DNA of 64,000 nucleotides, taken from IMG/VR virus record IMGVR_UViG_3300035665_000001, positions 1 through 64,000 of that record. One strand, 5' to 3'. Under the pieces are notes generated by a model. The model was not told where the DNA came from, did not search any database, and worked only from the letters and a program-made list of their open reading frames with translations. Position 1 is the first letter of the stretch, and each line of letters starts with the position of its first letter. Positions 5,522-61,700 of this stretch are shown piece after piece. The translations under genes and the position numbers were made by a program.

Positions 5522-8500
5522 TTAAACGTTTTTCTCCAAATAGTCCAACCAAAATTGAATAAGAAAGAAGTCATCATATTCGGCAATAGTTTTCGATTCA
5601 ACATACTGAATATAACTACTAATACAGACAATATCATCCTCAGATAAACATCTACCAAATGTTTCTTTCTCTAACGAAACTATATCAGAAATAAAAGTGG
5701 TATACGGTTTATCAGATTCAACTTTTTTAATCTCATAACCATAATGTAGTTCTAACTTTTTGTTAAGTAAAAATAAATCCATATCAATTTCATTATGCCA
5801 TTCATTAGTGGATAAATTTTGTTTTAATCTGTAATAAGTATCAGTCATAACAACACGGGTATCATCTGATAAAATTTGATAATTAACTATCAACTTTATT
5901 TTAAACAATAAGTTACGAAGATTTACAACCAATTTAATTAACATTTGACCATATTTTAATTTTTCATCAACATAACCTGTGACATCAAACAATTTTATCT
6001 CTTTCAATCTATCTTTAAAATGTTTAACATCCAATTGATTATAAGCATACGTAGCCGTCAATATTTCAAAAACAGTTTGTTGATCTTTATACAATTCAAT
6101 AAGCACACTTATATCAACGATATTCTGTTTAAAATCATATGCATGAACATCATTCATATATTCTGAAAAAGTCTTAGTCCCATTCAAATGGTTTTTATAC
6201 GCATTTAAAGTTGGGGTTATATCCATAAGCGGTAATTCAAAATTAATATCAAATGATTTTAATAAATTTTTGTTCAACGATGTTAATGCATACCGCTTAG
6301 ATTTTATATTATCCAACTCATAAAACAAATAGAAATTTTTATTTTCTGCTTCGAGGGTTTTTATTTCTGACATAACCAATTCATAGGATTCAACATCTAA
6401 ACCATCTAATACACCATACAACAAATTTATTCGTTCTAACCTAGTTATCAACATATTAAACATTTCCCGAACATTAGCTTTAAATACTAATGTAGGTACA
6501 GCCAAATTAGTAATCTCGGGTCTAAATTCATCTCGATCATATTGCCCCAATGAGGTATTCACAAAATAGCGAATATCAACATTATAAGTATATTTTCCTA
6601 AACCATTGCCAGATTCTGCACCTGTAACAACAGATGCAACAATATTTTTTATTTCGATAATACAATATCGATTTTTATTATTACGCAAAACCAATTTATC
6701 TCCAATAGTTACATTTATTTTTGTAAATGGAGTAGTATATTGTGCAGCATTATTAATATCATAAACACTTTTAACCGAACTTGGAACTTTCGTCATAAAA
6801 GTTATAAATTTACTGCCCGTTATATCCACAGTAGTATTACCAGATATAGGTACCGACAACCTAAAATCAAACAAAAATTCAGATGCTGGATCGGGATATG
6901 CAAATTTTGGATCAAATATTGTCGTATTATCAAACTCATGTCCCGGAAAACCAACACCATTATATCCAACAAAAACATATCCTAGTCTGTCAGCTAATAA
7001 TGTAGTATCCACTGTAGAAAAAGTAACAGCCCCTTTATCCAACATATCCTTTAACGCACCAGATAGATATAGAGGTCTAGTTACCAAAATTCCACTTTCT
7101 GGGTCAGCATATGTCATTTTTGGTACATCTGGGTTTAATTCTAATGGTGCGTAGTGAACATCTCCCATCTTTACAATTTGCGAATTTTTAGGTCCATCCA
7201 AATTAAAAGTTATATGACGTACAAATGCTTCACCAGTGGAGTAAGTAATTTCACATCTAACATCATATGTTCCAGCATCATAAAATGTATGTGCTACCTC
7301 ATTACCATCAAGAACCAATGTTTCTACAAACCATTTATATACTGCTTGTATTTCATTTCCGATAGCGTCAACAGTAGTTTCCATTTTTGCTTTTAATTCG
7401 ACAGTAAATGGGACATTACCAGTATATGAAATAGAATCGGTGTAATCTACTTTATCGGGAACTATAATATTATTATTGATGATAATATCAGTCCATTGCT
7501 TTCTATGTTTTTCAATCAACATATTTTTTTTATTTTCTAATTTTACAACTTCAACACAATTCTTAAATTTTCCAATAAGTTCCACAAAATTATAAAAATC
7601 ACATTTGATACTTTCATTATAATACTCAATATTACTAATAGTTTCGGTTGATAATTTAACGTTGTATTTAGTGTCCACCGAATACTCAACAATCATTTTT
7701 GTAATTTCTGATAATACCTGACTTTGTGTTAAGATTAACGCAGATATTCTACCTTTTTGACTAAACTTTACAACATTATCTTTATTTTTTAAATAAAATG
7801 GGTGAAGAATTAAAATACTGTGGTCCAATTTCTCATAGTCGTCCGTAACTCTCAAAATATTATGAAACCATCGAATGTAATTTATTCGCATCAACTGATT
7901 ATCAAAATATAATTTTTTTAAATTTTTTTCATTCAATAAAAATGCCTTTTCATTAGGTCTAGTTGAAATTATAAACTCATAAAGTATATCCAACTCGGCA
8001 AACAATTCACTTCTAACAACTTTATAAGTTTCATCATCAAATAAATCTGTTAAAATATCTACCGATTCAGAAAAACCGGTAGAAACTTTATCATGGGTTA
8101 TTTCATCCAAATATAATTTATCGATATTACCAATTTTAGTAAATATAGAATCAACCGAATCACTAAATTTTTCAAGTGCGTATAAAATATTAAAATCAAT
8201 TATATTTTCATTGTAAAAAGCGTTATATTCATTTAAAAATTGAATGTAACTTCCTTTATTATATAAATCGGTCAAAACATATGAAAACGCTTTAATTGGG
8301 GTATATATTTTAGTATCAATATATTCATTAAAACCAAAGAATACATTTTTCTTTGCAATAACTAATATAATTTCAACCTTGCTGACGTGCGATTTAAAAT
8401 CAATCAATTTATTCCGACACGATATTTTATTTTCATCGATACCCAAAAGTATATCATCTAGACGCTTACTTTTCAAATCTTCAAGATCAGCAGTTAATTT

Positions 8501-9952
8501 TTTTAAAAATAAAGTATAATCACGTTCTATCGATTCTGCGTATGTTGGTGGGGACAACTTATATGATGCAGTGAAAAATGTTAACGCTGCAGTTTTTAAC
8601 AATTCCTGAACTTTTACAACCTTTTGAACAAACGTATCAAATTCAAAATTATTAAGATGGTATGTTTCCTGCGTCAACAAATTATTATATCGAACAACCC
8701 CAAATTTATAATCGTTTCGTAAATCATCAATAGTAGAATCACCATAATTATCTATATCCAATTTTGAATATCGAAATATATTTGATGTCATCAAATTATA
8801 ATAATATTCCTTAACACTCAACAAAAACAGTTCAGTTTGATAAAATTCAAATGATAAGGTTACTGATTTGCCTGATTCGGAATATTTTTGGGTATAAACA
8901 ATTGGCTTTTTAACAACTTTAGTCATTTCAATTATATCCGAAACAATCTCCTTTAATGTCATATCAGTAATAATATAATCACAATCAACATTTATTTTAC
9001 CATCTTCAATCAATGTAATGTATGCTGAAAATCTATCAAGCATTTTATTGTATTCCGACTCAGTTTTATAATCAACATACATTTGATGTGATGCAATATC
9101 AGAAATAAATAATTTAACACGATTTGAAATAGATTCAAACGTATTTACTAAATTAGTAAACCTATAAACTCCTGATGAAACTATATTATTTTCATATGAT
9201 AATAAATTGTTTTTTATTTTTTCTACAATATCAAAATATTCGAAATTGGTTTGTTCAGGAGTTATCGCTATTGATTGTGATTTAACTTTATCAAATACGT
9301 CGGTATATTCATAAATTTTATTTTCAATCATTTTTTCGGTTGATACCATACTATGTAACTCAACTTTATTTTTATTGAGATACATAGTGTACAACCCATA
9401 CATATAATTGTAAACATCAGTAATGAACGTGCTCGATACATCGAAAATCTTTTTAGTTGGAACAGTTACTCGAAGAATATCATCAACATCATATGGATTA
9501 TTTGAAAAATAATAATATGGAGCAACTGTGTTATCACTATAAATTCTAGCATGTGTTAATACGTTTTGAATTTCATCAACCTCAACTTTTATCAACGGAG
9601 AGACAACAAGCATTTGTTCAAAACGATATAATGAATTAGTGAATGTTACTTTAGTATGAAGAATCTCTAATTCATATAAGTATGATCTAACTATTGCAGA
9701 TTCGATTTTATATTTTTCAAAAGTTACATTTAATGATTGTAATACTTTATCTATTTCACTATTTAATTCAGCAGTTACATCTATTTGTTTCAATACAAGT
9801 TCCAAATTGAATTTAAGAACATTATATTCATCAACAATTTTTTTATAATGAGTAATTTCAGTAGGTTGATCAATAAATTCATAAGTATTATGTGCTGATA
9901 GATTAAAATCCATAACAGCAACATATAATGAATTAAATTTAGTTCTAAACAT
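5522..9952 (-). CDS. Large helical/coiled-coil protein with a central PKD (Ig-like) domain
   Basis: 1476 aa. YTGNVPFTVEL...YKWF...HTFYDAGTYDVRCEITY fits the PKD pattern (~7200-7430). Confidence 0.7.
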   Translation of the reverse strand: MFRTKFNSLYVAVMDFNLSAHNTYEFIDQPTEITHYKKIVDEYNVLKFNLELVLKQIDVTAELNSEIDKVLQSLNVTFEKYKIESAIVRSYLYELEILHTKVTFTNSLYRFEQMLVVSPLIKVEVDEIQNVLTHARIYSDNTVAPYYYFSNNPYDVDDILRVTVPTKKIFDVSSTFITDVYNYMYGLYTMYLNKNKVELHSMVSTEKMIENKIYEYTDVFDKVKSQSIAITPEQTNFEYFDIVEKIKNNLLSYENNIVSSGVYRFTNLVNTFESISNRVKLFISDIASHQMYVDYKTESEYNKMLDRFSAYITLIEDGKINVDCDYIITDMTLKEIVSDIIEMTKVVKKPIVYTQKYSESGKSVTLSFEFYQTELFLLSVKEYYYNLMTSNIFRYSKLDIDNYGDSTIDDLRNDYKFGVVRYNNLLTQETYHLNNFEFDTFVQKVVKVQELLKTAALTFFTASYKLSPPTYAESIERDYTLFLKKLTADLEDLKSKRLDDILLGIDENKISCRNKLIDFKSHVSKVEIILVIAKKNVFFGFNEYIDTKIYTPIKAFSYVLTDLYNKGSYIQFLNEYNAFYNENIIDFNILYALEKFSDSVDSIFTKIGNIDKLYLDEITHDKVSTGFSESVDILTDLFDDETYKVVRSELFAELDILYEFIISTRPNEKAFLLNEKNLKKLYFDNQLMRINYIRWFHNILRVTDDYEKLDHSILILHPFYLKNKDNVVKFSQKGRISALILTQSQVLSEITKMIVEYSVDTKYNVKLSTETISNIEYYNESIKCDFYNFVELIGKFKNCVEVVKLENKKNMLIEKHRKQWTDIIINNNIIVPDKVDYTDSISYTGNVPFTVELKAKMETTVDAIGNEIQAVYKWFVETLVLDGNEVAHTFYDAGTYDVRCEITYSTGEAFVRHITFNLDGPKNSQIVKMGDVHYAPLELNPDVPKMTYADPESGILVTRPLYLSGALKDMLDKGAVTFSTVDTTLLADRLGYVFVGYNGVGFPGHEFDNTTIFDPKFAYPDPASEFLFDFRLSVPISGNTTVDITGSKFITFMTKVPSSVKSVYDINNAAQYTTPFTKINVTIGDKLVLRNNKNRYCIIEIKNIVASVVTGAESGNGLGKYTYNVDIRYFVNTSLGQYDRDEFRPEITNLAVPTLVFKANVREMFNMLITRLERINLLYGVLDGLDVESYELVMSEIKTLEAENKNFYLFYELDNIKSKRYALTSLNKNLLKSFDINFELPLMDITPTLNAYKNHLNGTKTFSEYMNDVHAYDFKQNIVDISVLIELYKDQQTVFEILTATYAYNQLDVKHFKDRLKEIKLFDVTGYVDEKLKYGQMLIKLVVNLRNLLFKIKLIVNYQILSDDTRVVMTDTYYRLKQNLSTNEWHNEIDMDLFLLNKKLELHYGYEIKKVESDKPYTTFISDIVSLEKETFGRCLSEDDIVCISSYIQYVESKTIAEYDDFFLIQFWLDYLEKNV

Positions 9953-13482: not shown

Positions 13483-14307
13483 TTATAAAACATTTTCTAG
13501 ATCTGGTCTTTCCTCTGCAGTGGGTAGAGTGATGTTCAATACAACATATAATACACCATCACTCAAACCCTTCTTAACACGCATTTTTTGACCATGTTTT
13601 GTATTTTGTGGAACTTTAATTTTGAAAACATCACCAAAAAAATTAATTTCTTTTTGCCCACCAAAAATTGCAGTTTTTAAATCAATAGTTTCCATAATAA
13701 AAATATCATTATTTTCAATAGTCATATTGTTTGGTGGTGTTATTTTAATAGTGATGTAAACATTACCAACGCGACCATTCATACTTCTTCCTTTACCTGA
13801 AACCCGCATTTTTGTACCATTCTTGATTCCAGCTGGAATAGTCAATTTTATATTTTCACCATTGATTTCAGTCGTAATATAATCACCATTAACTGCTGTT
13901 TCTAATGGGATAGCAACATCAACATGTATATCTAAATTGGCCTGTGGTCTAGGTGTTTCAAATGGTGAACCGCCACCAAAACTAAATGAACTACCACCAG
14001 CTCCACCACCAAACATATTTCTAAGCATTTCATCAATATCCATACCAGATGATCTATGATATTGATGAAAACCTTGTCCAGTGCCCTTGTTAAACATAGA
14101 ATCGCCACGCATATCATACTGAGATTTTTTCTCAGCATTGCCTAACACTTCATATGCGGCAGCAATTTCTTTAAATTTTTCCTCAGCATCTGGACTTTTA
14201 TTTCTATCGGGGTGATACTTATTCGCTAATTTTCTATAAGATTTTTTTATTTCATCAGCACTTGCATTTTCACTAACACCGAGAATACTATATAAACTTT
14301 TAGCCAT
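13483..14307 (-). CDS. cbpA: J-domain co-chaperone, CbpA/type II DnaJ
   Basis: J domain with HPD (KYHPDRN), G/F-rich linker, DnaJ C-terminal domain, no zinc finger. Confidence 0.9.
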
Positions 14308-14309
14308 AA

Positions 14310-14786
14310 TTATTTTCCTTGAATAATAACCATTGCAGCACGTAATAATCTGCCGTTTAAAATGTAACCTTTTCTAAGTACCTCTACGATTGAATTATCA
14401 TCCAACCCATTATCAACTTTCGCAATTGCTTCATGAAAATTAGGATCAAATTTTTCAGTATTAATTTCCTCAACACCATGTTTTTTCAAAGTATTAAGTA
14501 AACCCTTATAAAGTAATCCAACACCAACCCTAACATCATCTGGCATATCAACTTTCAATGAATTCTCAAAATTGTCCAAGGTTTCGAGCAAATCTTTTGA
14601 AAATCGTTCATTAGAAAATCTAACAGCATCTTCTTTTTCACGTTGTAATCGATTTTTAAAATTTTGAGAATCGGATAGTGCTCGATAATATTTGTCTTTA
14701 TATTCATTTACTTCATTGGTTAACTTTTCAAAAGTTTCGGGTGTATTTTCTAATACATCATCTTCATTCATCATATTTGTTCTCAC
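14310..14786 (-). CDS. grpE: Nucleotide exchange factor GrpE
   Basis: FDPNFHEAI...[18 protein letters not shown] GrpE signature; lies between dnaK and the J protein. Confidence 0.95.
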
Positions 14787-14834: not shown

Positions 14835-16124
14835 TTAGTGTTCAATTTCCGCCTCAAGAAAATCATCATCTGGCATAGATGCTGAATAGGTTTGATTATC
14901 CTGATTTTGCGATGCCTCATGCAACTTCGTACCAATTTCCTGGAACTTATTCATCAAAGTTTCATGAATTTTTTTAAGATCGGAAACAGTTGATGTTTCG
15001 TTACCTACCAATTCCTTTGCAGAATCAATAACAGATTTTAATTCGGCTGTATCTAAGGCTTCATTTTCCTTAATAAACTTTTCTGCCTGATTAATCGTAC
15101 CATCAATTGAGTTTGTAATACTAATTTTTTCAAGCTTATCTTTATTTCGAATGTTTGATTCCTCCGCATCTGCAACCATTTTAGAAATTTCATCATCAGT
15201 TAACGTACCACTACCAGTAATAGTGATTGAATTAGCTTTCCCCGTAGATAAATCTTTTGCAGAAACAGAAAGAATACCATTGGTATCAATATCCATCTTA
15301 ATTTCAATTTGAGGAACACCTCGTGGTGCAGGAGCAATTCCACCCAATTCAAATGTTCCTAACTGCTTATTATCAGAAAATAACTGTGCCTCTCCAGTAG
15401 CAATCATGACAGATACCGCAGGTTGGTTATCAGCCGCCGTTGAAAACACCTGTTTTGCAGATGTAGGAATAGTTGTACCTTTTTCAACCAGTTTAGTCAT
15501 CACACCACCCATAGTTTCAATTCCTAAAGATAATGGTGTGACGTCCAATAAAACAATATCATCAACATCACCTGCTAATACACCTCCTTGAATAGCAGCA
15601 CCTGCAGCAACCACTTCATCGGGGTTGACAGTATTATTCAAGATTTTACCATTAAAAAACTCAGAAACTTTTGTTTTTACTAATGGAATACGAGTTGAAC
15701 CACCAACCATTACAACTTCCTGGATTTTTGATTTATCTAACCCAGCCTGTTTCAAAGCATCTTTGATATGGGTGAGAATTTCATCAACCATTGGTTCAAT
15801 CATAGAATCTAATTTAGCTCTAGTCACTTTCGAAATCAAATGTTTTGGACCTGAAGCATCAGCAGTAATGTATGGTAAATTAATTTCAGTTTCCATAGTT
15901 GCAGAAAGTTCTTTTTTTGCTTTTTCAGCAGAATCCATTAAACGTTGCATAGCAAGTGCATCATTAGATAAATCCATACCAGTATCAGATTTAAATTGAG
16001 AAATTAAGTATCCCATAATCGCCTGGTCTACGTCCTTACCACCCATAAAAGCATTACCATCGGTTGATAAAACTTCAAATGTTCCTTCTTCACCAACATC
16101 AATAACTGAAATATCTAATGTTCC
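14835..16124 (-). CDS. dnaK: DnaK (Hsp70), exon 2
   Basis: GTLDISV...VVMVGGSTRIP...NPDEVVAAGAAIQG...LLDVTPLSLGIET...PAPRGVPQIE. 429 aa after the splice junction. Confidence 0.95.
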   Translation of the reverse strand, partial: GTLDISVIDVGEEGTFEVLSTDGNAFMGGKDVDQAIMGYLISQFKSDTGMDLSNDALAMQRLMDSAEKAKKELSATMETEINLPYITADASGPKHLISKVTRAKLDSMIEPMVDEILTHIKDALKQAGLDKSKIQEVVMVGGSTRIPLVKTKVSEFFNGKILNNTVNPDEVVAAGAAIQGGVLAGDVDDIVLLDVTPLSLGIETMGGVMTKLVEKGTTIPTSAKQVFSTAADNQPAVSVMIATGEAQLFSDNKQLGTFELGGIAPAPRGVPQIEIKMDIDTNGILSVSAKDLSTGKANSITITGSGTLTDDEISKMVADAEESNIRNKDKLEKISITNSIDGTINQAEKFIKENEALDTAELKSVIDSAKELVGNETSTVSDLKKIHETLMNKFQEIGTKLHEASQNQDNQTYSASMPDDDFLEAEIEH

Positions 16125-16457
16125 CGATTTGTTATCGTAGGGGAATTTAACCCCCACTTCTAATAGTTTCCTATTAGTCCAGACTATATCTTAGTTTGTT
16201 AATTTTCAAACCTTCCGCACTCTTGGAGTTTTACCTTCTTCAGCATTATCTGGTCAGAATCCATACTCTAGTCGTTGAACCTTGAACTTATTTCTAAGTC
16301 CCTTGGCTGCTGATTTTCCAATCTTAACCCTTTTCAAACCATTATCCCTATCTTCACAGATTTGATTGTGGTGTGTTAAGCTCTAAGGACGTCCCAGCAA
16401 TTCACGGAATTTTTTTAAACTGGAGGCTTGTTATGCTGCTACTGCAGCCAATAGTTC
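16125..16457 (-). ncRNA. Group I self-splicing intron (333 nt, no ORF) in dnaK
   Basis: Exon ends in U (GGT GGT|) and intron ends in G (..AAATCG|GGA ACA). Core elements in order: GAATTGCTGGGA (P), AATCAGCAGCC (Q), GTTCAACGACTAGA (R), AAGATATAGTCT (S). Removal restores DFGG-GTLD. Confidence 0.92.
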
Positions 16458-17048
16458 ACCACCAAAATCCACAACACAAATGGTTTCATCTTTTTTCTTA
16501 TCAATACCATACGCTAATGCTGCTGCAGTAGGTTCGTTAATAATACGTAACACATTAAGACCGGCAATTTTACCAGCATCCTGTGTTGCTTTACGTTGTG
16601 AATCATTAAAGTAAGCAGGAACAGTAATAACTGCATCAGTAACAGTTGTACCTAAATATGCCTCAGCATCCACTTTTAATTTTGAAAGAATCTTAGCAGA
16701 AATCTCTTGAGGCGTGTAAGTCTTACCATCAATCTCAACAGCGGCAGCACCATTTCTATCTACAATGTTGTATTGTACTTTAGTTTTTGCTTCCTCAGTT
16801 TTTTTCTCATTACTCATTAAACCCATAATACGTTTAACAGCTTCAATTGTTTTATGGGGGTTTGTTACTGCCTGACGTTTTGCAGACTCACCAACCAAAA
16901 CTTCATCACCTGCAAAAGCCACAATTGATGGAGTAGTATTATTACCCTCACGATTTGGGATAATTTTTGACGTTCCATTTTCATAAATGGAAATACAACT
17001 ATTAGTGGTTCCTAAATCTAAACCAAGCACAATTTGTTTTTTACTCAT
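16458..17048 (-). CDS. dnaK: DnaK (Hsp70), exon 1
   Basis: [54 protein letters not shown]. 197 aa; spliced product 626 aa. Confidence 0.95.
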
Positions 17049-17074
17049 AATATTTTCCTCATTAAGCTAAATTA

Positions 17075-17872
17075 TTAATTAATGTATTTTTTTTCAATAA
17101 TTGGTTTGAAAAATTGTATCCAACTTTCTCTATTCCAATTGGTTTTCGAATGACAGCTATTACATAACACTATCAAATTTTTTTCATCTGAGTTTTGTTT
17201 ATTATAATCTATATGATGAATGTGTAGTTTTGATGTAATTTCAAAACGGTTACACAGTTGGCATTGTAAATTATCACGAACCTTTATCAGATATTTCTTT
17301 TGCTTATTAAAGCCTACATCGTATTCACCAAAACTTAAACCACCTTGCCAATTATGATGATATTGTAGTTTTGGTGTATTCTGGTTTTGTTTTAAAAACC
17401 CAGTATCATCATAAGATCTTTTACCTTTCCTTGAATCAGAAGCCCATTGCTTATATTCATCGGTATGTTCTTTACCAAAAAAAGGATTTTTTTCACCAAT
17501 TCTCGGATTATCTTTCAAATACATTTTCAATGAATTTGAAATTTTACTCGATACCATAGGATCACATGATGGATTGTTTTTTCCAGAAAAACGGTCTGAC
17601 ATAGTTTTTCTTAATTCAGCAGCTCTATCACGTCCAATTCGATCTTCCCAACTGATTGTTTTTTGCCAATTAATTTGACATTTTTTAGAACAATATCGCC
17701 TTTTTTCAGATCCAACCCTTAATAATCCTTTTCGTGGTCCAGTTTTAACAATTTTTAATTGTATCACCACACCACAAAATTCACAGTTTTTAATATCAAA
17801 TAATTTATGGTCCATATAACATTTCCTAAAATGTATATTACTATACATTATTTTAATGAACATATGATCCAT
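17075..17872 (-). CDS. Free-standing HNH homing endonuclease with NUMOD3-like DNA-binding motifs
   Basis: GEKNPFFGKEHT (NUMOD3-like); CQLC...LHIHHIDYNKQNSDEKNLIVLCNSCHSKT (HNH). Confidence 0.85.
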   Translation of the reverse strand: MDHMFIKIMYSNIHFRKCYMDHKLFDIKNCEFCGVVIQLKIVKTGPRKGLLRVGSEKRRYCSKKCQINWQKTISWEDRIGRDRAAELRKTMSDRFSGKNNPSCDPMVSSKISNSLKMYLKDNPRIGEKNPFFGKEHTDEYKQWASDSRKGKRSYDDTGFLKQNQNTPKLQYHHNWQGGLSFGEYDVGFNKQKKYLIKVRDNLQCQLCNRFEITSKLHIHHIDYNKQNSDEKNLIVLCNSCHSKTNWNRESWIQFFKPIIEKKYIN

Positions 17873-17897: not shown

Positions 17898-18395
17898 TTA
17901 AATAAAATTTTCGGGATATTTGTCAATAACATCGGATACTATGTTATACGGCAATATTTCACCAAATCGCAACTGTATTGATCGATATTCCAAAATATCA
18001 AAAAAATCGTTATACTTGATAAAATTATTAGTTAAGTATATGGCAATTAATAAATTTTTATTTGAATATTTACCTTTTAAAAAATGAAAATCATCATTCC
18101 TGGATCGAATAACATCAACTACTGAATAGTAAATAATTGATAATTCTTCTGGAAACTGTTTAGGTCCTCCAAATCTATCCTTTAACAATATATCACTTTC
18201 AATATCATAAATTACATCCGAACGCATAGTTAAATTGCGATTTGATAATTTTGTTTCACGCACATTTGGTTTATAAACTTTAAAAATAAGATAATCGCCA
18301 AATTTTATATTTGGAATATCACCATAGTCAAATGTATCACCAAATTGCTGTCTTACAGCAAAAATTGCCAATGACATTGATAATCCTCTCTTCAA
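17898..18395 (-). CDS. Hypothetical protein
   Basis: ORF track; start uncertain; ends KYPENFI. Confidence 0.65.
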   Translation of the reverse strand: MKRGLSMSLAIFAVRQQFGDTFDYGDIPNIKFGDYLIFKVYKPNVRETKLSNRNLTMRSDVIYDIESDILLKDRFGGPKQFPEELSIIYYSVVDVIRSRNDDFHFLKGKYSNKNLLIAIYLTNNFIKYNDFFDILEYRSIQLRFGEILPYNIVSDVIDKYPENFI

Positions 18396-18415
18396 AAAAA
18401 AATTATACCAAAATT

Positions 18416-18835
18416 TTATTTAATTGGAATGTAATGAATCTCTTTTTCTTTTATAGTTGGAGTTACAACAACTCTTAATATACCATCAATAATTTCTGCA
18501 TCAATTTTATCAACTGGAAACATTAAACTATAGGCAACATCAAAATTTCTTTTTGCAATATCACGTTTGATATATTCTCGACCATCATCAATATTTTCAT
18601 CGGATTTTGAACCCATAATTCGCAATGAATCTTCGGACAATTCAATTTTGATATCTTCTTTTGAAAACCCAGCAACTGCAATTTCTAAATGGGCAATGCC
18701 ATCTTTAGTATAAACGTCGGTCAATGGATATTTACTGACTGCTTTAGTATTAGTAAACACCTGTCCAAAAAACTCATTGACAGCATCTTCTAAAACAGCA
18801 TTAGCGGGGTAAAAATGTATATTTCTTGTTCTCAT
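18416..18835 (-). CDS. Small heat-shock protein (Hsp20/IbpA-like)
   Basis: YPLTDV...LEIAVAGFSKEDIKIEL...YIKRDIAKRNF...AEIIDGILRV alpha-crystallin domain; ATG 18835 is 7 nt after AGGAG. Confidence 0.92.
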   Translation of the reverse strand: MRTRNIHFYPANAVLEDAVNEFFGQVFTNTKAVSKYPLTDVYTKDGIAHLEIAVAGFSKEDIKIELSEDSLRIMGSKSDENIDDGREYIKRDIAKRNFDVAYSLMFPVDKIDAEIIDGILRVVVTPTIKEKEIHYIPIK

Positions 18836-18841
18836 AATCAA

Positions 18842-19514: not shown

Positions 19515-20135
19515 TCACACCAATTTTCTTAACGCTTTTAATGCAGCTAATTCAACTTCTGACGGTTTACCAGATGCAAGTTTATCCTGAATTTCAGAAA
19601 TCAATGGCAGAATACCTACTCCAGCCTTAGATGTTTCGATATTTGAATCTTCTTCATCTTCATCATCAAGAGAAAGTTCGTCACTGTTATCTTCATCGTC
19701 TAATGACAATTCATCTGTATCTGTATCATCCAGAGAAAGTTCGTCACCATTATCTTCATCGTCTAGTGATAATTCATCTGTATCTGTATCTGTACCTGTA
19801 TCATCAAGAGAAAGTTCGTCACCACCATCTTCACCATCGAGCGTTAATTCATCATCTTCATCATCGAGAGAAAGTTCATCACTGTTATCTGCATCATCGA
19901 GTGTTAATTCATCATCTTCTACAGGGGCTTCATCATCTAACGTTAATTCCGCTTCCTTTAACTTATCATCCAAATAAGCTGCATTTTCAGCGGCATTTCG
20001 TAAAATCCACATATCATATTCAGTTAACAACGAAATACCATAATTTTGAATATTAACTGCCTCAACCAAAGCAACTCGTTGACTCTCTGCGGTGTTTTTC
20101 ATTTCTTTTAAAACATCAATCCTTTTCATATTCAA
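19515..20135 (-). CDS. Highly acidic protein with EL(S/T)LDD repeats, probable late head/scaffold-type protein
   Basis: About 8 copies of EL[ST]LD[DG]; TATAAATA at 20159-20166. Confidence 0.75.
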   Translation of the reverse strand: MNMKRIDVLKEMKNTAESQRVALVEAVNIQNYGISLLTEYDMWILRNAAENAAYLDDKLKEAELTLDDEAPVEDDELTLDDADNSDELSLDDEDDELTLDGEDGGDELSLDDTGTDTDTDELSLDDEDNGDELSLDDTDTDELSLDDEDNSDELSLDDEDEEDSNIETSKAGVGILPLISEIQDKLASGKPSEVELAALKALRKLV

Positions 20136-55748: not shown

Positions 55749-58700
55749 ATGCCAATTAACAACAGAGCAATACAAGTAGAAACATCTGAATTTACCGACA
55801 GAATTAAAGATGCTGGAAATGATTTAGCAGAATTATCATATGTTATGCGGGATTTGGAATCAACATTAAATAATTCTAAAACAAGAAAGGCAGAACTTGC
55901 AAGACAAAAACTTACCGGTAGATTAACCGACGAGGAAGAAGCTGCATTGACAGCATTGACAGCTCAAATTGAAGCATTAGACGCAGTTAGAAAAAGAGGT
56001 GCACAAAAAGCAAAAAAATTAGATGCTCTGCAAGAATCTTTGGGTAGAAATATGGTAAACAGAGATCGGATGCTAGGTGATTCAATGACTGGCGTTCGTG
56101 GTGCATTGTTTCACGGTATGCGAGGTGTTCAAGCATTTACTGGTTCACTTGGTAACGTAGGAGAAAGTCTTTCCGAATTAAACACCGTAGTAGGTAGTAC
56201 AGGAACACAATTAAACAAGTCGTCCCAGGATTTATCCATAGTATTTGGTAAATTAGCAGATGCAGTATTAAGAGCCCGTGGACCATTTGCAATATTAGCA
56301 GCCGTAATAGGTGCAGCAGGTATTGCAGTAAAAAGGTATCACGATAGATTGGCAATCGCCCGAGACATGGGTGGTGGTGCTGGTTTATCTCGTGATTTAC
56401 AAAGTATGTCCACCAAACTAAATGTTGATCCTGACCAGTTAAAAGCATTGTCAAATACTATATCCGAAAGTTTTAACGTATCAATGACTAACAATCAAAA
56501 AGAAATCGCTAAGGTCTCTTTAAAAAATCAATTAGATGAAAAAGTTATGGGTAAAGAATATGCAGAAGATTCTATGGCATCAATGGCGGAATTAAAAGAT
56601 TCATTCACTGCAAATTCTCCAACAGCATTATTAACAAAAATGTCATCAGCTACGTCCGTTTTAGCTAAAACTATGGGTATTAGTAATAAGATGGCACTTG
56701 CACATATCAAGGCAATAAATCAAAATACAAAGGAACTTGCAGGTGAAGAAAATAGTGATGTTCAAGAGGCTATAAATGAAGGATTCATGGAAATGTCAGC
56801 TGGTTGGGATGCTAGTGGTTATGACCAAGAAACTCAGAAAAAACTAAGGGATACAGCAACTCAAAATCTTTCAGATGATAAGGTTGGGCACTCTGGAATC
56901 AGATTGCAAGAAAGTTTACATGATGGTTCTAAAGGTGGTCAAATACTACAGGCTAAAATGGAAAAAGCCAATATATCTGCTGACGATGCGTCTAAGTTAT
57001 ATCAGCGAAAATCGATGGGTGCCGTTATGACACCCGACGAAATGAAAAAACTTGCAATGCTTTCACAAATGCAGGCTGAAGCCGATGCAATCACAATGGA
57101 AGATCTTAGTAAAACTGCCAGAGAAAAAAGAGGAACAGCAGAAGGTACAGATGCAGAAAACAAACTAAGAATTCTCAGAGATAACGGGGCAAAACAAAAT
57201 TCTGGTGTTGCAAATGCCACCAATAAATCCTCAGTCAATGATATTTTATCCAAATCTGCAGCAGGTGATAAATCCTATGCCGCAAACAAGGATAGTGAAA
57301 AAAATACAGCTGCACTTAATAAACTCGTTGCTGGTATGGGGATAAAAAATTCTAAAGATAAAGATGATTTTTTAAAAACCTTACAGAATAGCCAACAAGA
57401 AGCAGAAAAAATAGGATTTGATAAAGATAAGTATAATAAGGCTTTACGTACACAAAGAGAGGCAATATTAAATAAAAACGGTGTGGCACTTTCTGGAAAA
57501 GAATCAGATAGTGAAATTGAAGCTAAATTCAACGAAAAAACTTCTACGGATCAACAGGAGTCTGCGAAAGATTCTGCGTTTTCAGCTGCATTAGACACTA
57601 ATAAATTAACTTCATTTATAGATAATTCTGCTACTTCAGGTGCTACTCTTGCAGGTAAAACAGTGCAAGGTCAAGACTTTAGAAACAATACAAGCGAAAA
57701 AACTTTAGCTGAAAACGAATTAACAGCTAACATGACTGGTGCTGAACAGGTAGAAAGAAAATTAGCAACCTTAGCTAGTGGTGCATTAGATACATTTGAA
57801 AATAAAATAATGGAAGTGGTAGAAAAAGCTATTGATCCTATAAACAAAGCAATAGATGGTTTAGTTAAGTCATTTACCTGGTTAAAAACTACATTAGACC
57901 CATTATTTACCGCAATAGGTGAATTATACGATAAAAATTTAAAACCCGTAATTGATAGATTTACCGCATGGTTTTCAACTGAAGGAATGGATAAACTAAA
58001 ATCATCGTTTGAAACTTTTGTAAATTGGTTATCATCTGTAACAACAAAGTTAGGTCCTATTTTTTCAGCAGTGACCGATTGGGGTGAAAAACATATTTTA
58101 CCCTTATTCAAAAAAATTGGAAATATTGCTGCAGCTTTATTTGGTGCTGCAGTAGATGTAGGAGAAGGGGTTGCAGGTGGTGTAACATCCGATACTGGAA
58201 CAGCAGCAATTGTAGGTTCCTTTAAACTATTAGGGGGCATAGTGGATGCAGTCACCAATAATTTGGAAATATTATTGACTGTATATGCAGGTCTTAAAAC
58301 TGCAATGTTGGCAGAAACATCAGCAAGATGGTTGATGGCAAAAAAACAGCAAATCTCATCTGCTATACCTGAGGTTACAGGTAGAGTAAGAGGTGCAGGA
58401 TCAAAACTTGGAAAAGCAGCTTTATATGCAGGTGCAGCTTATGGTGCAGCACATCTTATGAGTTCAGATGCACAGGCAGATGATGGTAGTGAAGGAGAAG
58501 ATAATAAATCAACTATTGAAAAAGTAATTGATAGTCCTGTTACTGATATAGCTTTGATGGCTGGTCCAATGCTCAAAAACTTAATTCCTGGCATTGGAAC
58601 TACACTAATGACCGCGTTAAGTGGTTTAGGTCCATTAGTATTAAGTGCATTGAGTGGTTTGGGTTCATTCTTAATGAGTACACTTACTCTAGCTGGACCA

Positions 58701-61700
58701 GCAATTATGACTGCACTAGGTACAATCGGTACTACTATCGCTACTGCACTTTCACCACTTTTATTACCAATTGCCGGAGTAGTTGCTGCAATTGCAGCGG
58801 CAGTTTTATTATTCAAAGGATGGAATAATGCTGCTGAAGATTTCAAAGATTCTGAAGAAATGAAGGAAAAAAGAAAGTTATTAGAAACTAATACTCCAGA
58901 AGCGAAGGCTTATGCAGAATCAATTTCTGAAACTGGGAAAGCTTTTTGGGATGGCAAAAAATACGTTGATGAATTTGGTAAAACTATAGAGGCACAACCG
59001 TCATTATTGCAAAAAACATCAAGTGCTCTATCTGCTCTATCGTTAGGTTTTTTTGATCCTGTAAAAATAGAAGCTAGTTTAAGCTCTATTGGTACGATGT
59101 GGAATTCGATGTTGGAGTTCTTTAAAAACATCGATCTCGCAAAAATATTCAGTGATTTATGGACAAGTGTTACTAATTATTTTACCGAAGCAAAAGTTCA
59201 CTTAGTTGAAATATTCTCAGGTTACTCAGAAATTTTTACAGCACCATTTAAAGCAGTTCAAGCCTGGTTTAACGGCGAAATGTCATTTAAAGAGGCTCTA
59301 GAAGTAGCATGGCAAGGAATACAAGGTGGGTTTGGAAAAATAGCTGAAAATCTTGGTGAATTATTAACAATGCCTTTTAGAACTGTTCTTAATTTTTTAG
59401 AAACGGGAATAAAAAACTTAACATCTCATTTACCATCATGGTTAGGTGGTAGAGATGATAAAAAAGAAGAAGAGGCTAAAAAAGAAGAGTCCAAAAAAGA
59501 AGAAAATAAAAGTAGTTGGTTTAGTAGACTTTTACCAATTTCATCCGCACATGCAGATGAATTACCAAAAGATGGAAAATTACCTCCTGCATTTGTACCA
59601 CCACAAGCTAGTAATTTAACTACGAGTGATATTGAGCTTGAGAAAAAAGAAAAAGAGAAAGCAACAATTGAAAAACAAACTAAAAATTTAGAGTTGGCTA
59701 AAACTAATGAAGATGCTGCACAAATAGAAGCAGAAAAAGCTGAGTTAGAAAGAATCAATAAATTGAAATCATTGGATGATTTAAAACTTCAATTGAATGA
59801 AAATGAAAAAATAGCATTAGAAAGAGAAAAAATTGAAAAAGATGCAAAAGATAATAAAGATGCTGCTATAAAAGCTAATCTTGACAAAGCAAAAATTGAA
59901 AAAGAGGCTGCTGAGAAAGCGTTAGAAGATGCAAAGAATGCATCTAATCAACCATCATTCTTTGCATCATTAGGAACATTTTTCTCATCATTAGCTGGGT
60001 CAGCACAATCATCTATTGGTGATATGGTAAGTTCTGCAAAACAATCAGTTAACAATGGTTCTCTAATCAAGGATATAGGTACAGGAATCAAAGATACTAC
60101 TAGTAGTGTTGGTGATTACGCAACAAAAAAATATAATCAATTTAAATTTAATGAGGTTGACGCAGCATTAGCCTTCCAAGGTGGTGCATCGATAAAAGGA
60201 CTTAGTGACGTCCAAACCAGAGCATTAGCAGCAAATACGGCAAAAACTGAAAGTGGTGGTAGAATAGATGCAGACAATAATCAGGGGTATTTTGGTCAAT
60301 ATCAATTTGGTGCTGAAGCTTTAGCTGAAAGTGGATTAGTTGATAAAGAAAAACTAGCAGCTGCAAAAAAAGCATCTAAGGGTGGCTGGTACAAAAAACG
60401 ATCTTCAGATGGATCTATGGGTGGTCATGAAGCATTTTTAAGAGACAAATCTAATTGGAAAATTCAAGGTGGGTTAGATGAGTTTTTAAAAAATAAAGAA
60501 TTACAGGATAAATCTTTCATTACATACACAAATAAAAACGTTGCAGGTGGATTTAGAAGTGGTGCACTTTCAGAAAATGATGATGCTGGAAAAATTGCAG
60601 GTTATTCTAAGGCTGCACATTTAAAAGGTGTTGGTGGTGCAAACAAGCTATTTAAACAGGGTGTTGCTTCTTACGATGGTAATGGTAAATCTACTGTTAC
60701 ATATGCTAAACAAGCAACAGATGCAATGGATAGCACTGTACATGCTATAAATGAAAGAATTGGGAAAGGTGGTAAACCAGAACAACCACCATCTCTATTA
60801 GCTAAAGTAGGTCACGCGTTAAATCCAATAAAATCTGCATCTGCCGATGAGTTTAATCCAGGGATAGTGAATACTTCGGAAATGTCAAATAATCTTGTTG
60901 CTGGTGTTAATTCCGCACTTTATAAAGGTGTTAATGATGATATTGCCCGTGGTGTGAAATATAAAATGGGTTCGAGAGATTCATCTAGTGGAGCGATAGA
61001 CTGTTCTGGGTTTGTTTTGGAACAAATGCAATGTGTTAAGGATGCAATCAATGACCCATCACAGATTTCAGATGCAATGAAAGCTATGAAAAAGGGTAAC
61101 ACTGCTGCTGGTATTACTCAAGAACTTGCAAAATTATCTGGCAAAGAATTAACAGGTAAGGATGTTAATGCTGCAAATTTAAAAGAAGGTATGACCATTG
61201 GTATTGATAACAATAAGGCTAATAACAATGACCGATACAAAGGTATTGATCATATTGCTCAAGTTGTAAAAGATCCAAATACTGGTGAATTGATGGTTAG
61301 TCATTCAGGTAGTAAAGGTCCAACAATGTTACCTGTTGAAAAATTCCTGAAGCAAAATGCAGGAAACGATATGACTGCTGTGGATCCTTTATTTAATGTT
61401 CGTGGTAAAGAAAATTCACCAATTACTTCAAATGGTAATGCAACACAAGCTATTTCAATACCAACTCAACAGGCAACTCAACAAGAAACCCAACAAGCGT
61501 ACCAACAACTGGCAACGGTTCCAATGAGTGAAGATGATGTCCTTTCTGTATTAAAAGCTATTTTAACAACACTAAGACAATCAAATGGTATTTCGGGTCC
61601 TGCATCAACACCTATTAATTCAACACCTACAGCACCAGTTAATAATGTGGTAACAACACCACTGACCGATTCTTCGACCACACAAAGTGTTGTTCAAACA

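What the first reader, a model, noticed from the sequence alone, without database searches (positions are those of the whole stretch)
16125..17872. ORF-less intron next to a free-standing HNH endonuclease: candidate collaborative homing
Seen: the intron has no ORF, but an HNH/NUMOD3 gene ends 26 nt upstream of dnaK, about 620 bp from the insertion site. Known: collaborative homing pairs a free-standing endonuclease with an intron that disrupts its target. Inference: this HNH cuts intron-less dnaK near the GGGT codons. It might also cut the host's own conserved dnaK, favouring the phage copy.
Basis: inference. Interest (0 to 1): 0.65.

Follow-up and report, generated by a model that had tools for sequence, protein, structure and literature searches.

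The report
Phage dnaK intron beside HNH endonuclease
A jumbo phage's dnaK chaperone gene carries a self-splicing intron with no gene of its own and a DNA-cutting (HNH) gene just upstream; both are real mobile elements aimed at dnaK, but comparison with relatives suggests they spread separately, not as an obligate pair.

Summary
dnaK (minus strand) is split between the 2nd and 3rd Gly codons of D-F-G-G|G-T by a 333-nt ORF-less group I intron (16457..16125; Rfam 63.8 bits). A zinc-ribbon/NUMOD3/HNH gene (17815 or 17872..17075) ends 26 nt before dnaK, 618 nt from the insertion site.

The collaborative-homing interpretation is only partly supported.
- **HNH family:** every close homologue with enough flank sits directly upstream of a phage dnaK, in at least 14 lineages with different upstream neighbours. 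It is patchy on the DnaK tree, and the closest syntenic relative lacks it. This fits a dnaK-specific free-standing homing endonuclease.
- **Against a partnership:** 11 of 14 HNH-bearing dnaK genes have no intron, and some of their insertion-site sequences match HNH-less alleles.
- **Intron family:** the same intron occurs at the same site with its own GIY-YIG gene (L088) or LAGLIDADG gene (L191).
- **Separate movement:** window and L088 introns are 94.5% identical, against 66-75% for exons and 68% for the HNH gene. The intron moved recently without the HNH gene.
- **For a link:** all three introns of this family lie in HNH-bearing genes.

The cleavage site is unknown. This is a new member of a known kind, of moderate interest.

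The parts
17075..17872 (-). Free-standing endonuclease gene with an N-terminal CxxC...CSxxC zinc ribbon, a NUMOD3 region and a C-terminal CxxC / HH / N / CxxCH HNH motif. The maximal ORF is 265 aa. The likely true start is the ATG at 17815 (246 aa).
   Evidence: Pfam NUMOD3 at 29.4 bits and HNH at 25.9 bits. PHROGs HNH endonuclease families. A 42-sequence family alignment has invariant C204, C207, H219, H220, N232, C237, C240, H241 and N245. The AlphaFold2 model has mean pLDDT 86, and its best PDB fold matches are McrA/Cap5/Cas9-type HNH domains, all weak. The database gene call is 246 aa.
17049..17074 (-). 26-nt spacer between the HNH stop codon and the dnaK ATG. It contains the dnaK ribosome-binding site (GAGGAAAA).
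   Evidence: Read directly from the sequence.
16458..17048 (-). dnaK exon 1 (197 codons), ending ...V-V-D-F-G-G. The last base is T, the usual U at position -1 of a group I 5' splice site.
   Evidence: Pfam HSP70 positions 1-195, E 1.3e-83. 80 of 80 homologues are continuous across this point.
16125..16457 (-). ORF-less group I intron, 333 nt. It has the conserved core, an insertion between P7 and P3' (P7.1/P7.2-like, as in subgroup IA), a P9 hairpin with a GAAA loop, an extra P9.1 hairpin, and a terminal G at 16125.
   Evidence: Rfam RF00028 at 63.8 bits, E 9.5e-16. It is the only hit in the genome. Three-way alignment with L088 and L191 gives 13 of 37 and 7 of 18 predicted pairs with compensatory changes. 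There is no sense-strand ORF longer than 27 aa.
16420..16427 (-). Proposed internal guide sequence (GCCUCCAG). It pairs with the exon-1 end UUGGUGGU to form P1, with a U.G pair at the splice site and one U-U mismatch.
   Evidence: Inspection. In L191 both the exon (CUUGGUGGU) and the guide (GCUUCCAAG) differ and still pair. This part is inferred, not measured.
16193..16212 (-). P8 hairpin (GGUUUG / 8-nt loop / CAAACU). This is the place where the L088 copy of the intron carries a roughly 960-nt insert encoding a 274-aa GIY-YIG endonuclease.
   Evidence: Alignment of the window intron with L088:4856-6149. Pfam GIY-YIG and SegE_GIY-YIG on the L088 ORF.
14835..16124 (-). dnaK exon 2 (429 codons), beginning G-T-L-D-I-S.
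   Evidence: Pfam HSP70 positions 196-597, E 2e-129. tblastn junctions.
13483..14786 (-). grpE (14786..14310) and dnaJ (14307..13483), downstream of dnaK. These are context genes of the chaperone cluster.
   Evidence: Pfam GrpE, DnaJ and DnaJ_C.
17898..18841 (-). hsp20 (18841..18416) and a conserved 165-aa ORF (18395..17898), upstream of the HNH gene. In the closest relative, L005, the ORF165 homologue is followed directly by dnaK, which marks the HNH gene as an insertion or deletion.
   Evidence: Pfam HSP20. Synteny with L005.

Best explanation
Two separately evolving selfish elements are stacked on the dnaK gene of a jumbo phage.

**(1) The intron.** The 333-nt intron is a member, without an endonuclease gene, of a small group I intron family. 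The family always sits between the 2nd and 3rd codon of the G-G-G of the Hsp70 phosphate-2 motif (D-x-G-G|G-T). It is removed by RNA self-splicing, so a normal DnaK is made. That step is inferred from the intact, covarying ribozyme core and from purifying selection on both exons. Other members carry their own homing endonuclease gene: GIY-YIG in the P8 loop (L088), or LAGLIDADG in the P7.1/P8 region (L191). Those enzymes are the likeliest drivers of the family's spread. The window copy has either lost such a gene or never gained one.

**(2) The HNH gene.** The zinc-ribbon/NUMOD3/HNH gene belongs to a family that is always inserted just 5' of a phage dnaK, whatever lies further upstream. It is present or absent among close relatives. 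It is therefore most likely a dnaK-specific free-standing homing endonuclease. Such an enzyme nicks or cuts HNH-less dnaK alleles during co-infection, and its gene is copied in by repair.

**Relationship.** The two elements share a target gene but not a history. The HNH gene is as diverged as the surrounding genes, whereas the intron arrived recently. Any help the HNH enzyme gives the intron, whether by cutting at the insertion site or by co-conversion from a nearby cut, is possible but not shown.
For: **Intron identity and junction:**

**Intron family at the identical site:**
- L088: 1294 nt with a GIY-YIG ORF.
- L191: 1054 nt with a LAGLIDADG_2 ORF at E 1.6e-21.
- Compensatory changes occur in P5a, P5b, P6, P9 and P9.1.

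**Recent, separate movement of the intron (window vs L088):**
- Intron 94.5% nt identity over 253 nt.
- Exon 1 74.5%, exon 2 66.1%, HNH gene 68.2%, hsp20 60.2%. Third codon positions are 47-57% identical.
- No high-identity tract joins the intron to the HNH gene.

**HNH family tied to dnaK:** L085-L097, L175-L185 and L191-L194. More distant HNH/NUMOD3 proteins (L098-L173) have no dnaK nearby.

**Patchy distribution:**
- At least 6 gains or losses are forced by well-supported branches of the DnaK exon-2 tree.
- The syntenic relative L005 lacks both the HNH gene and the intron.

**HNH without intron:** 11 of 14 lineages. For example, the L094 site is identical to HNH-less L008 over about 20 nt around the junction.

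**Same site in Lak phages:** the same dnaK site is occupied by another group-I-like intron. Lak-C1 has that intron without any upstream nuclease gene.
Against: - All three introns of this family are in HNH-bearing dnaK genes: 3 of 14 HNH-bearing lineages against 0 of 57 unique HNH-less alleles. The two sets were sampled from databases of different size, and the count is not corrected for phylogeny.
- In the 306-kb genome, the only Rfam intron and the only Pfam-HNH gene lie 618 nt apart.
- The third Gly codon at the site is GGA in 7 of 13 HNH-bearing alleles against 5 of 57 HNH-less alleles (Fisher p = 7e-4, a post hoc feature). This could be a trace of target-site immunity.
- Lak-B phages repeat the pattern of an upstream nuclease gene plus an intron, including an intron whose ORF has decayed.
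- No cleavage site has been mapped, so a cut at the insertion site is not excluded.
Confidence: 0.52

Rival explanations
1. Strict collaborative homing. The HNH enzyme recognises and cuts the D-x-G-G-G-T coding sequence of intron-less dnaK. The intron splits that site and makes its carrier immune. The break lets the ORF-less intron, and often the HNH gene, be copied into the recipient.
For: - An ORF-less intron lies 618 nt from the only HNH gene in the genome.
- The HNH family is dnaK-linked and mobile.
- All three introns of the family lie in HNH-bearing genes.
- The GGA codon is enriched, and two G-to-S variants occur, next to the site in HNH-bearing alleles.
- The window-L088 intron transfer left only short flanking similarity (27/30 and 25/30 nt), as expected of a break at the site itself.
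- Precedents exist in cyanophage psbA and T7-like DNA polymerase genes (PMC3984707, PMC2790892).
Against: - 11 of 14 HNH-bearing lineages are intron-less. L094, L096 and L177 have the canonical GGTGGT|GGTAC site found in most HNH-less alleles, so they would cut themselves unless recognition depends on more distant bases.
- The G-to-S variants co-vary with a changed phosphate-1 motif (TG[FV]S), so they look functional rather than protective.
- The sister introns have their own GIY-YIG or LAGLIDADG genes, which already explain mobility at this site.
- The HNH gene did not travel with the intron.
Confidence: 0.25
2. Trans homing by proximity, as with T4 MobE and the defunct I-TevIII intron. The HNH enzyme nicks or cuts somewhere else in the 5' part of dnaK or the upstream spacer. 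Repair then drags the nearby intron along by co-conversion.
For: - The intron is 618 nt from the HNH gene, well within the roughly 2-kb co-conversion range reported for T4 (PMC2790892).
- The intron lacks an endonuclease gene, while a sister copy has one.
- Pairwise HNH divergence tracks exon 1 (r = 0.56) better than exon 2 (r = 0.38), as expected if the HNH gene and the dnaK 5' end are inherited together.
Against: Between the window and L088, exon 1 and the HNH gene are only 68-75% identical while the intron is 94.5% identical. The last intron transfer was therefore not a long conversion tract starting near the HNH gene. Most HNH-bearing genes have no intron.
Confidence: 0.13
3. The HNH protein is not a homing enzyme. 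It could be a domesticated nuclease, for example one that degrades host DNA or host dnaK, or one with a packaging role. It would then simply be co-transcribed with the chaperone cluster.
For: - The catalytic domain is of the McrA/Cap5/Cas9 HNH type rather than the I-HmuI type.
- The gene is always co-oriented with dnaK and a few tens of nt upstream of it.
Against: - A closely syntenic relative lacks it (L005).
- It is scattered on the DnaK tree.
- NUMOD3 modules are typical of homing endonucleases.
- The linkage to dnaK survives complete changes of the rest of the neighbourhood, which fits a target-linked selfish gene better than an operon partner.
Confidence: 0.08

Closest known systems
Collaborative homing: cyanophage S-PM2 psbA intron with F-CphI, and the T7-like phage DNA polymerase intron with an adjacent HNH gene (Zeng et al. 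2009; Bonocora and Shub 2009, as reviewed in PMC3984707)
   Same: [quoted passage not shown] The intron is inserted at a highly conserved coding site.
   Different: Here the cleavage site is unknown. The HNH family is mostly found without the intron. Sister copies of the intron carry endonuclease genes of other families (GIY-YIG, LAGLIDADG), not the neighbouring HNH. The intron and the HNH gene have different ages.
Trans homing of the T4 nrdB intron (defunct I-TevIII) by the free-standing HNH enzyme MobE (Wilson and Edgell 2009, PMC2790892)
   Same: A free-standing HNH gene lies immediately upstream of a gene whose intron has no working endonuclease, and the distance is within co-conversion range.
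   Different: No conversion tract links the HNH gene and the intron in the one informative comparison. MobE activity and nick sites were shown experimentally; nothing has been tested here.
T-even phage group I introns with GIY-YIG endonucleases (td intron with I-TevI) and the gain, decay and loss cycle of homing endonuclease genes
   Same: The intron has a phage-type core with P7.1/P7.2-like elements. An endonuclease ORF sits in a peripheral loop (P8 in L088), with its 3' end overlapping core sequence. ORF-containing and ORF-less forms occur at one site. The intron is near-identical between genomes whose exons have diverged.
   Different: The host gene is dnaK, at the ATPase phosphate-2 motif. 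No paper pairing dnaK with a phage group I intron was found in the searched library. Three different endonuclease families are associated with one site.
Lak megaphage dnaK intervening sequence (seen here in records MK250020, MK250023 and MK250029)
   Same: The insertion point in the codon series is identical (D-L-G-C | G-T). It has group-I-like core strings, ORF-containing and ORF-decayed forms, and, in Lak-B, an endonuclease-like gene ending 7 nt upstream of dnaK.
   Different: Outside the core the intron sequence differs, and Rfam gives no hit. The nuclease families differ (PD-(D/E)xK-like). TAG is read as a sense codon. Lak-C1 has the intron without the upstream gene.

Membership tests
Group I intron (Rfam RF00028) | Covariance-model score at or above the curated gathering score | tested here: met
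   63.8 bits against a gathering score of 50, E 9.5e-16, model positions 1-253. The result was confirmed in the whole-genome search.
Group I intron (Rfam RF00028) | Interrupts a gene exactly where homologues are continuous, with the reading frame restored on removal | tested here: met
   In 80 of 80 viral dnaK loci exon 1 abuts exon 2 at this point. The two exons cover HSP70 positions 1-195 and 196-597.
Group I intron (Rfam RF00028) | U at the last exon position paired to G of an internal guide sequence (P1), and G as the last intron base | tested here: met
   The exon ends ...GGU and the proposed guide is GCCUCCAG at 16427..16420. The intron ends ...AUCG at 16125. Guide and exon change together in L191. 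The pairing was found by inspection, not measured.
Group I intron (Rfam RF00028) | Conserved helices supported by covariation | tested here: met
   13 of 37 pairs (P4-P6 domain) and 7 of 18 pairs (P9, P9.1) have compensatory changes among three sequences. The sample is small.
Group I intron (Rfam RF00028) | Self-splicing with guanosine | not testable with these tools
An in vitro transcript assay is needed.
Free-standing HNH homing endonuclease | HNH motif with catalytic His, Asn and metal or zinc ligands | tested here: met
   Pfam HNH at 25.9 bits. H219, H220, N232, H241, N245, C204, C207, C237 and C240 are invariant in 42 homologues. The model has pLDDT 86 with HNH-domain fold matches.
Free-standing HNH homing endonuclease | DNA-binding modules typical of homing enzymes (NUMOD) | tested here: met
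   Pfam NUMOD3 at 29.4 bits.
Free-standing HNH homing endonuclease | Intergenic position next to a conserved gene, with presence or absence varying among close relatives | tested here: met
   The gene is absent from syntenic L005. It is scattered on the DnaK tree with at least 6 changes. It is always directly 5' of dnaK.
Free-standing HNH homing endonuclease | Site-specific cleavage of alleles that lack the gene, and biased inheritance | not testable with these tools
   This needs an enzyme assay and phage crosses.
Collaborative homing pair | [quoted passage not shown] | not testable with these tools
   Only indirect evidence is available. HNH-bearing, intron-less alleles L094, L096 and L177 have the canonical site, which argues against this feature. 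The GGA codon enrichment argues weakly for it.
Collaborative homing pair | Intron and endonuclease gene co-occur across relatives | tested here: inconclusive
   3 of 3 family introns are in HNH-bearing genes, but only 3 of 14 HNH-bearing genes have the intron. Lak-C1 has an intron at this site without an upstream nuclease gene.
Collaborative homing pair | Intron lacks any endonuclease gene of its own in the lineage | tested here: not met
   The window copy is ORF-less. The 94.5%-identical L088 copy encodes GIY-YIG, and the L191 copy encodes LAGLIDADG.
Trans homing (MobE-type) | Shared conversion tract spanning the endonuclease gene, the intervening exon and the intron | tested here: not met
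   Window vs L088: HNH gene 68%, exon 1 74.5%, intron 94.5% nt identity. Sliding windows show no continuous high-identity tract.

The most novel reading that the evidence does not exclude
The HNH enzyme does cut at the phosphate-2 coding site. This one roughly 30-bp stretch of phage dnaK would then be a homing hotspot on which four endonuclease families converge: free-standing HNH, intron-borne GIY-YIG, LAGLIDADG, and a PD-(D/E)xK-like enzyme in Lak phages. Introns there would serve as immunity against the upstream nuclease. The natural series found here would capture every stage of the proposed route from a free-standing endonuclease to a composite mobile intron, all in a single gene. The stages are: HNH alone; HNH plus an ORF-less intron; HNH plus an intron with its own endonuclease; and an intron with a decayed endonuclease gene.
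Probability: 0.22. Interest if true: 0.68.

Novelty: new member of a known kind. Interest (0 to 1): 0.5.

Why it matters
Homing endonucleases and self-splicing introns shape gene exchange between phages. How the two come together is known from only a few laboratory cases.

This locus adds a new host gene, the Hsp70 chaperone dnaK of jumbo and mega phages. It also adds a compact natural series that can be tested directly:
- the HNH gene alone;
- the HNH gene plus an intron without an ORF;
- the HNH gene plus an intron carrying GIY-YIG or LAGLIDADG;
- in Lak phages, an intron whose endonuclease gene has decayed.

If the HNH enzyme cuts at the insertion site, this would be a third and much richer example of collaborative homing. 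If it does not, the locus shows that proximity of an intron and an endonuclease gene is not enough to infer partnership.

The HNH family is also a candidate source of a new site-specific nicking or cutting enzyme that recognises a universally conserved coding sequence.

Tried and rejected
- **Rfam whole-window scan.** It found nothing at gathering thresholds. This was a filter artefact, because the local scan gives 63.8 bits.
- **HNH protein against IMG/VR with single-protein patterns.** No hits. The alignment-based scan found four close loci.
- **First word search of the HNH protein.** It timed out and succeeded when repeated.
- **Intron-specific DNA patterns.** The 30-mer gave 0 hits in viral contigs and only the L088 contig in metagenome contigs. 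The degenerate P7-P9 pattern gave 0 hits in viral contigs and in genome contigs. No further copies were found.
- **Relatives of the L088 GIY-YIG and L191 LAGLIDADG proteins in IMG/VR.** None lies near dnaK, so this HNH-independent route to more split dnaK genes gave nothing.
- **Promoter and terminator scan around the genes.** Nothing above the shuffled expectation.
- **HNH-specific amino-acid changes in DnaK exon 1.** None is consistent. The G-to-S change beside the site (L085, L181) goes with a changed phosphate-1 motif, so I rejected it as evidence of target immunity.
- **Fold search of the HNH model.** Only weak matches to generic HNH domains, with no homing-endonuclease structure singled out.
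- **Host dnaK cleavage.** This could not be addressed because the host is unknown.
- **Spliced DnaK protein.** The spliced protein was never assembled or searched. All searches, trees and alignments were done exon by exon, by reference.
Full report
**What is there**

The window is the first 64 kb of a 306,333-bp IMG/VR virus record, a jumbo phage estimated at about 85% complete. On the minus strand lies a chaperone cluster:
- hsp20 (18841..18416)
- a conserved 165-aa ORF (18395..17898)
- an HNH/NUMOD3 ORF (17872..17075)
- dnaK in two pieces (17048..16458 and 16124..14835)
- grpE (14786..14310)
- dnaJ (14307..13483)

The 333 nt between the dnaK pieces match the Rfam group I intron model at 63.8 bits (gathering score 50, E 9.5e-16) over the whole model. 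The whole-window scan with default filters missed this match.

Eighty other viral dnaK loci all run straight through this point. The junction is therefore GGT GGT | GGA ACA, between the 2nd and 3rd Gly of D-F-G-G-G-T, the Hsp70 phosphate-2 motif. The exon ends in U and the intron ends in G. A guide sequence at 16427..16420 can pair with the exon end; this is by inspection. No sense-strand ORF inside the intron exceeds 27 aa.

The HNH ORF ends 26 nt before the dnaK ATG and 618 nt from the insertion site. Homologues and the database gene call indicate a start at 17815, giving 246 aa.

**Is the proximity chance?**

This is the only RF00028 hit and the only Pfam-HNH hit above cut-off in the whole record. 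The record does contain two distant GIY-YIG-like frames, near 168 kb and 199 kb.

**The HNH family**

A word search found about 40 proteins that are 41-65% identical over nearly the full length. They share:
- an N-terminal CxxC...CSxxC zinc ribbon;
- NUMOD3-like helices;
- a C-terminal CxxC / HH / N / CxxCH HNH motif with invariant catalytic and zinc residues.

An AlphaFold2 model built on this alignment has mean pLDDT 86. Its fold matches are generic McrA/Cap5/Cas9-type HNH domains, and all are weak.

I fetched the genomic context for every homologue I could. In every case with enough flank, the gene lies directly upstream of dnaK and is co-oriented with it:
- megaphage LR756504.1 (L085)
- L086, L088, L090 and L092
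- IMG/VR loci L094-L097
- L175-L185
- L191 and L193

The gene further upstream differs between these loci: hsp20 or ORF165 homologues, a 104-aa ORF in a cyanophage-like context, an AAA protein, or an MmcB-like protein. More distant HNH/NUMOD3 proteins (L098-L173) have no dnaK nearby.

On a tree of the exon-2 part of DnaK, the HNH-bearing genes are scattered among HNH-less ones, and well-supported branches force at least 6 changes. This was the quick tree; the careful search did not finish. In the window's own clade (support 99), L086, L092, L088/L089 and the window have the gene. The syntenic relative L005 goes straight from the ORF165 homologue to dnaK.

This is the pattern of a free-standing homing endonuclease gene whose target is in or beside dnaK.

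**The intron family**

Two of the HNH-based loci have a split dnaK at exactly the same junction.

- **L088/L089** (the same contig as L174) has a 1294-nt intron. Its first 253 nt are 94.5% identical to the window intron. Its P8 loop carries a 274-aa GIY-YIG ORF, and the stop codon lies in the P8 3' strand. The window has an 8-nt loop at that place.
- **L191/L192** has a 1054-nt intron with a recognisably homologous core. The alignable parts are 69-78% identical. It carries a LAGLIDADG_2 ORF in the P7.1-P8 region.

Across the three sequences, 13 of 37 predicted pairs in the P4-P6 domain and 7 of 18 in P9/P9.1 show compensatory changes. P3, P8 and the P1 guide also change in step (by inspection). 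The ribozyme is therefore under selection.

Both exons are under purifying selection too. Between the window and L088, first and second codon positions are 70-90% identical and third positions 47-51%. From this I infer that the intron splices and that DnaK is made.

Everything was done exon by exon.

**Do the two elements travel together?**

They do not appear to.

- **Different ages.** Between the window and L088 the intron is 94.5% identical. Exon 1 is 74.5%, exon 2 66.1%, the HNH gene 68.2% and hsp20 60.2%. Sliding windows show no continuous high-identity tract from the intron to the HNH gene. Only the 30 nt on each side of the junction are somewhat raised (27/30 and 25/30), and these are conserved codons anyway. 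The intron was therefore exchanged long after the two genomes and their HNH genes diverged, through an event local to the insertion site.
- **HNH mostly without the intron.** Of 14 HNH-bearing lineages with known status, 11 have an uninterrupted dnaK.
- **No visible target-site immunity.** Three of those 11 (L094, L096, L177) carry the canonical GGTGGT|GGTAC found in 32 of 57 HNH-less alleles. L094 matches HNH-less L008 over about 20 nt around the junction. If the enzyme recognised this core, those genomes would be cutting themselves.
- **Other drivers exist.** The family's other members have their own endonuclease genes, which are sufficient to explain homing at this site.

**What still speaks for a link**

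- All three introns of this family are in HNH-bearing genes: 3 of 14, against 0 of 57 unique HNH-less alleles. The naive Fisher p is below 0.01. The window and L088 are sister lineages, however, and the two sets come from databases of very different size.
- The third Gly codon is GGA in 7 of 13 HNH-bearing alleles against 5 of 57 HNH-less ones (p = 7e-4). This feature was chosen post hoc and is clustered in three clades.
- Two HNH-bearing lineages read G-S-G-T at the site, but they also have an altered phosphate-1 motif, so this looks like functional co-variation.
- Pairwise HNH divergence correlates with exon 1 (r = 0.56) more than with exon 2 (r = 0.38). This fits linked inheritance of the HNH gene and the dnaK 5' end.

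**A parallel in Lak megaphages**

The DNA search showed different spans for Lak dnaK genes, so I looked at four records.

| Record | Intervening sequence in dnaK | Endonuclease-like gene upstream of dnaK |
|---|---|---|
| Lak-A1 | none (site reads D-L-G-C-G-T) | absent |
| Lak-B1 | about 1.5 kb, after GGT TGT and before GGT ACA, the same codon position | present |
| Lak-B4 | 584 nt, same sequence with the ORF internally deleted | present |
| Lak-C1 | long form, 92.7% identical to Lak-B1 | absent |

The Lak-B1 sequence has group-I-like core strings and a 356-aa endonuclease-like ORF when TAG is read as a sense codon, as in Lak phages. The upstream gene in Lak-B1 and Lak-B4 is a 292-aa endonuclease-like gene that ends 7 nt before dnaK. 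Rfam gives no hit on the Lak sequence, so calling it a group I intron rests on inspection.

The site is thus a recurrent target in unrelated huge phages, and an intron can sit there without an upstream nuclease gene.

**Comparison with known systems**

- **Collaborative homing.** A free-standing enzyme cuts at the insertion site of an ORF-less intron (reviewed in PMC3984707).
- **Trans homing.** T4 MobE nicks nrdB away from the insertion site, and the intron with the defunct I-TevIII gene is carried along by co-conversion, effective within about 2 kb (PMC2790892).

The window has the anatomy required by both. The defining feature of the first, the location of the cut, cannot be tested here. 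The expected trace of the second, a shared conversion tract, is absent in the one informative comparison.

A library search found no paper pairing dnaK with a phage group I intron. That is a search of the held library, not proof of absence.

**Verdict**

| Reading | My probability |
|---|---|
| Two selfish elements that share a target gene but have separate histories. The intron is an endonuclease-less member of a family otherwise driven by its own GIY-YIG or LAGLIDADG enzymes. The HNH gene is a dnaK-specific free-standing homing endonuclease. | about 0.5 |
| Strict collaborative homing | about 0.25 |
| Trans homing by proximity | about 0.13 |
| A non-homing role for the HNH protein | under 0.1 |

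The suggestion that the enzyme also cuts host dnaK is untested. The core of the site is nearly universal at the nucleotide level in the alleles sampled, so it is conceivable, but nothing supports it.

**Limits**

- No enzyme or RNA data are available.
- Context look-ups were exhausted at 12, so four HNH-bearing loci end before the insertion site (L097, L175, L179, L193).
- The HNH-less set comes from IMG/VR only.
- The tree is the quick version.

Noticed in passing
L195 (Lak-B1, MK250020.1 397027-402583), L196 (Lak-B4), L197 (Lak-A1), L198 (Lak-C1): Lak megaphage dnaK is split at the same codon position (D-L-G-C | G-T). Lak-B1 and Lak-C1 have a group-I-like sequence of about 1.5 kb that encodes a 356-aa endonuclease-like ORF when TAG is read as Q. 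Lak-B4 has a 584-nt version with the ORF internally deleted. Lak-A1 is uninterrupted. Lak-B1 and Lak-B4 also have a 292-aa homing-endonuclease-like gene ending 7 nt upstream of dnaK, which is absent in Lak-A1 and Lak-C1. Rfam does not recognise the sequence.
   Followed up: partly
L086:7642-9000 (+): A 452-aa frame joins an N-terminal HNH motif and three NUMOD3 motifs to a complete GrpE domain. This is either a second endonuclease gene fused in frame to grpE or an upstream insertion that lacks a stop codon.
   Followed up: partly
G000:C1:168191-168940 (+) and 199083-199904 (+), outside the window: Two long open frames (423 and 383 aa) show distant similarity (26-37% identity) to the GIY-YIG endonuclease of the L088 intron. 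The Pfam GIY-YIG model itself finds nothing in the genome.
   Followed up: no
window 16122-16124 and the equivalent codon in related loci: The third Gly codon of the G-G-G triplet is GGA in 7 of 13 HNH-bearing alleles but in only 5 of 57 HNH-less alleles (Fisher p = 7e-4). The feature was picked post hoc, is not corrected for phylogeny, and is clustered in three clades.
   Followed up: partly
L085:6813-8690 and L181:4710-6659: Two HNH-bearing phage DnaK proteins have both ATPase loops altered. Phosphate-1 reads D-L-G-T-G-[FV]-S instead of D-L-G-T-T-N-S, and phosphate-2 reads G-S-G-T instead of G-G-G-T.
   Followed up: no
window 13483-14786, compared with L005:7296-8354: The window has grpE and dnaJ right after dnaK. 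The closest syntenic relative, L005, has unrelated small genes there, so the chaperone cluster varies in content among related jumbo phages.
   Followed up: no
window 19515-20135 (-): A 206-aa protein is built largely of acidic D/E-L-[ST]-L-D-D repeats. It is conserved in position in L005 (3390-4007), where the repeat unit is different.
   Followed up: no
window 55749-63407 (+) and 5522-9952 (-): Two very long ORFs (2552 aa and 1476 aa) were not examined.
   Followed up: no
window 16125-16489: Technical point: the Rfam scan of the whole 64-kb window at gathering thresholds returned nothing. A local scan scored the intron 13.8 bits above the gathering score. Default filters can therefore hide group I introns in AT-rich phage DNA.
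   Followed up: yes
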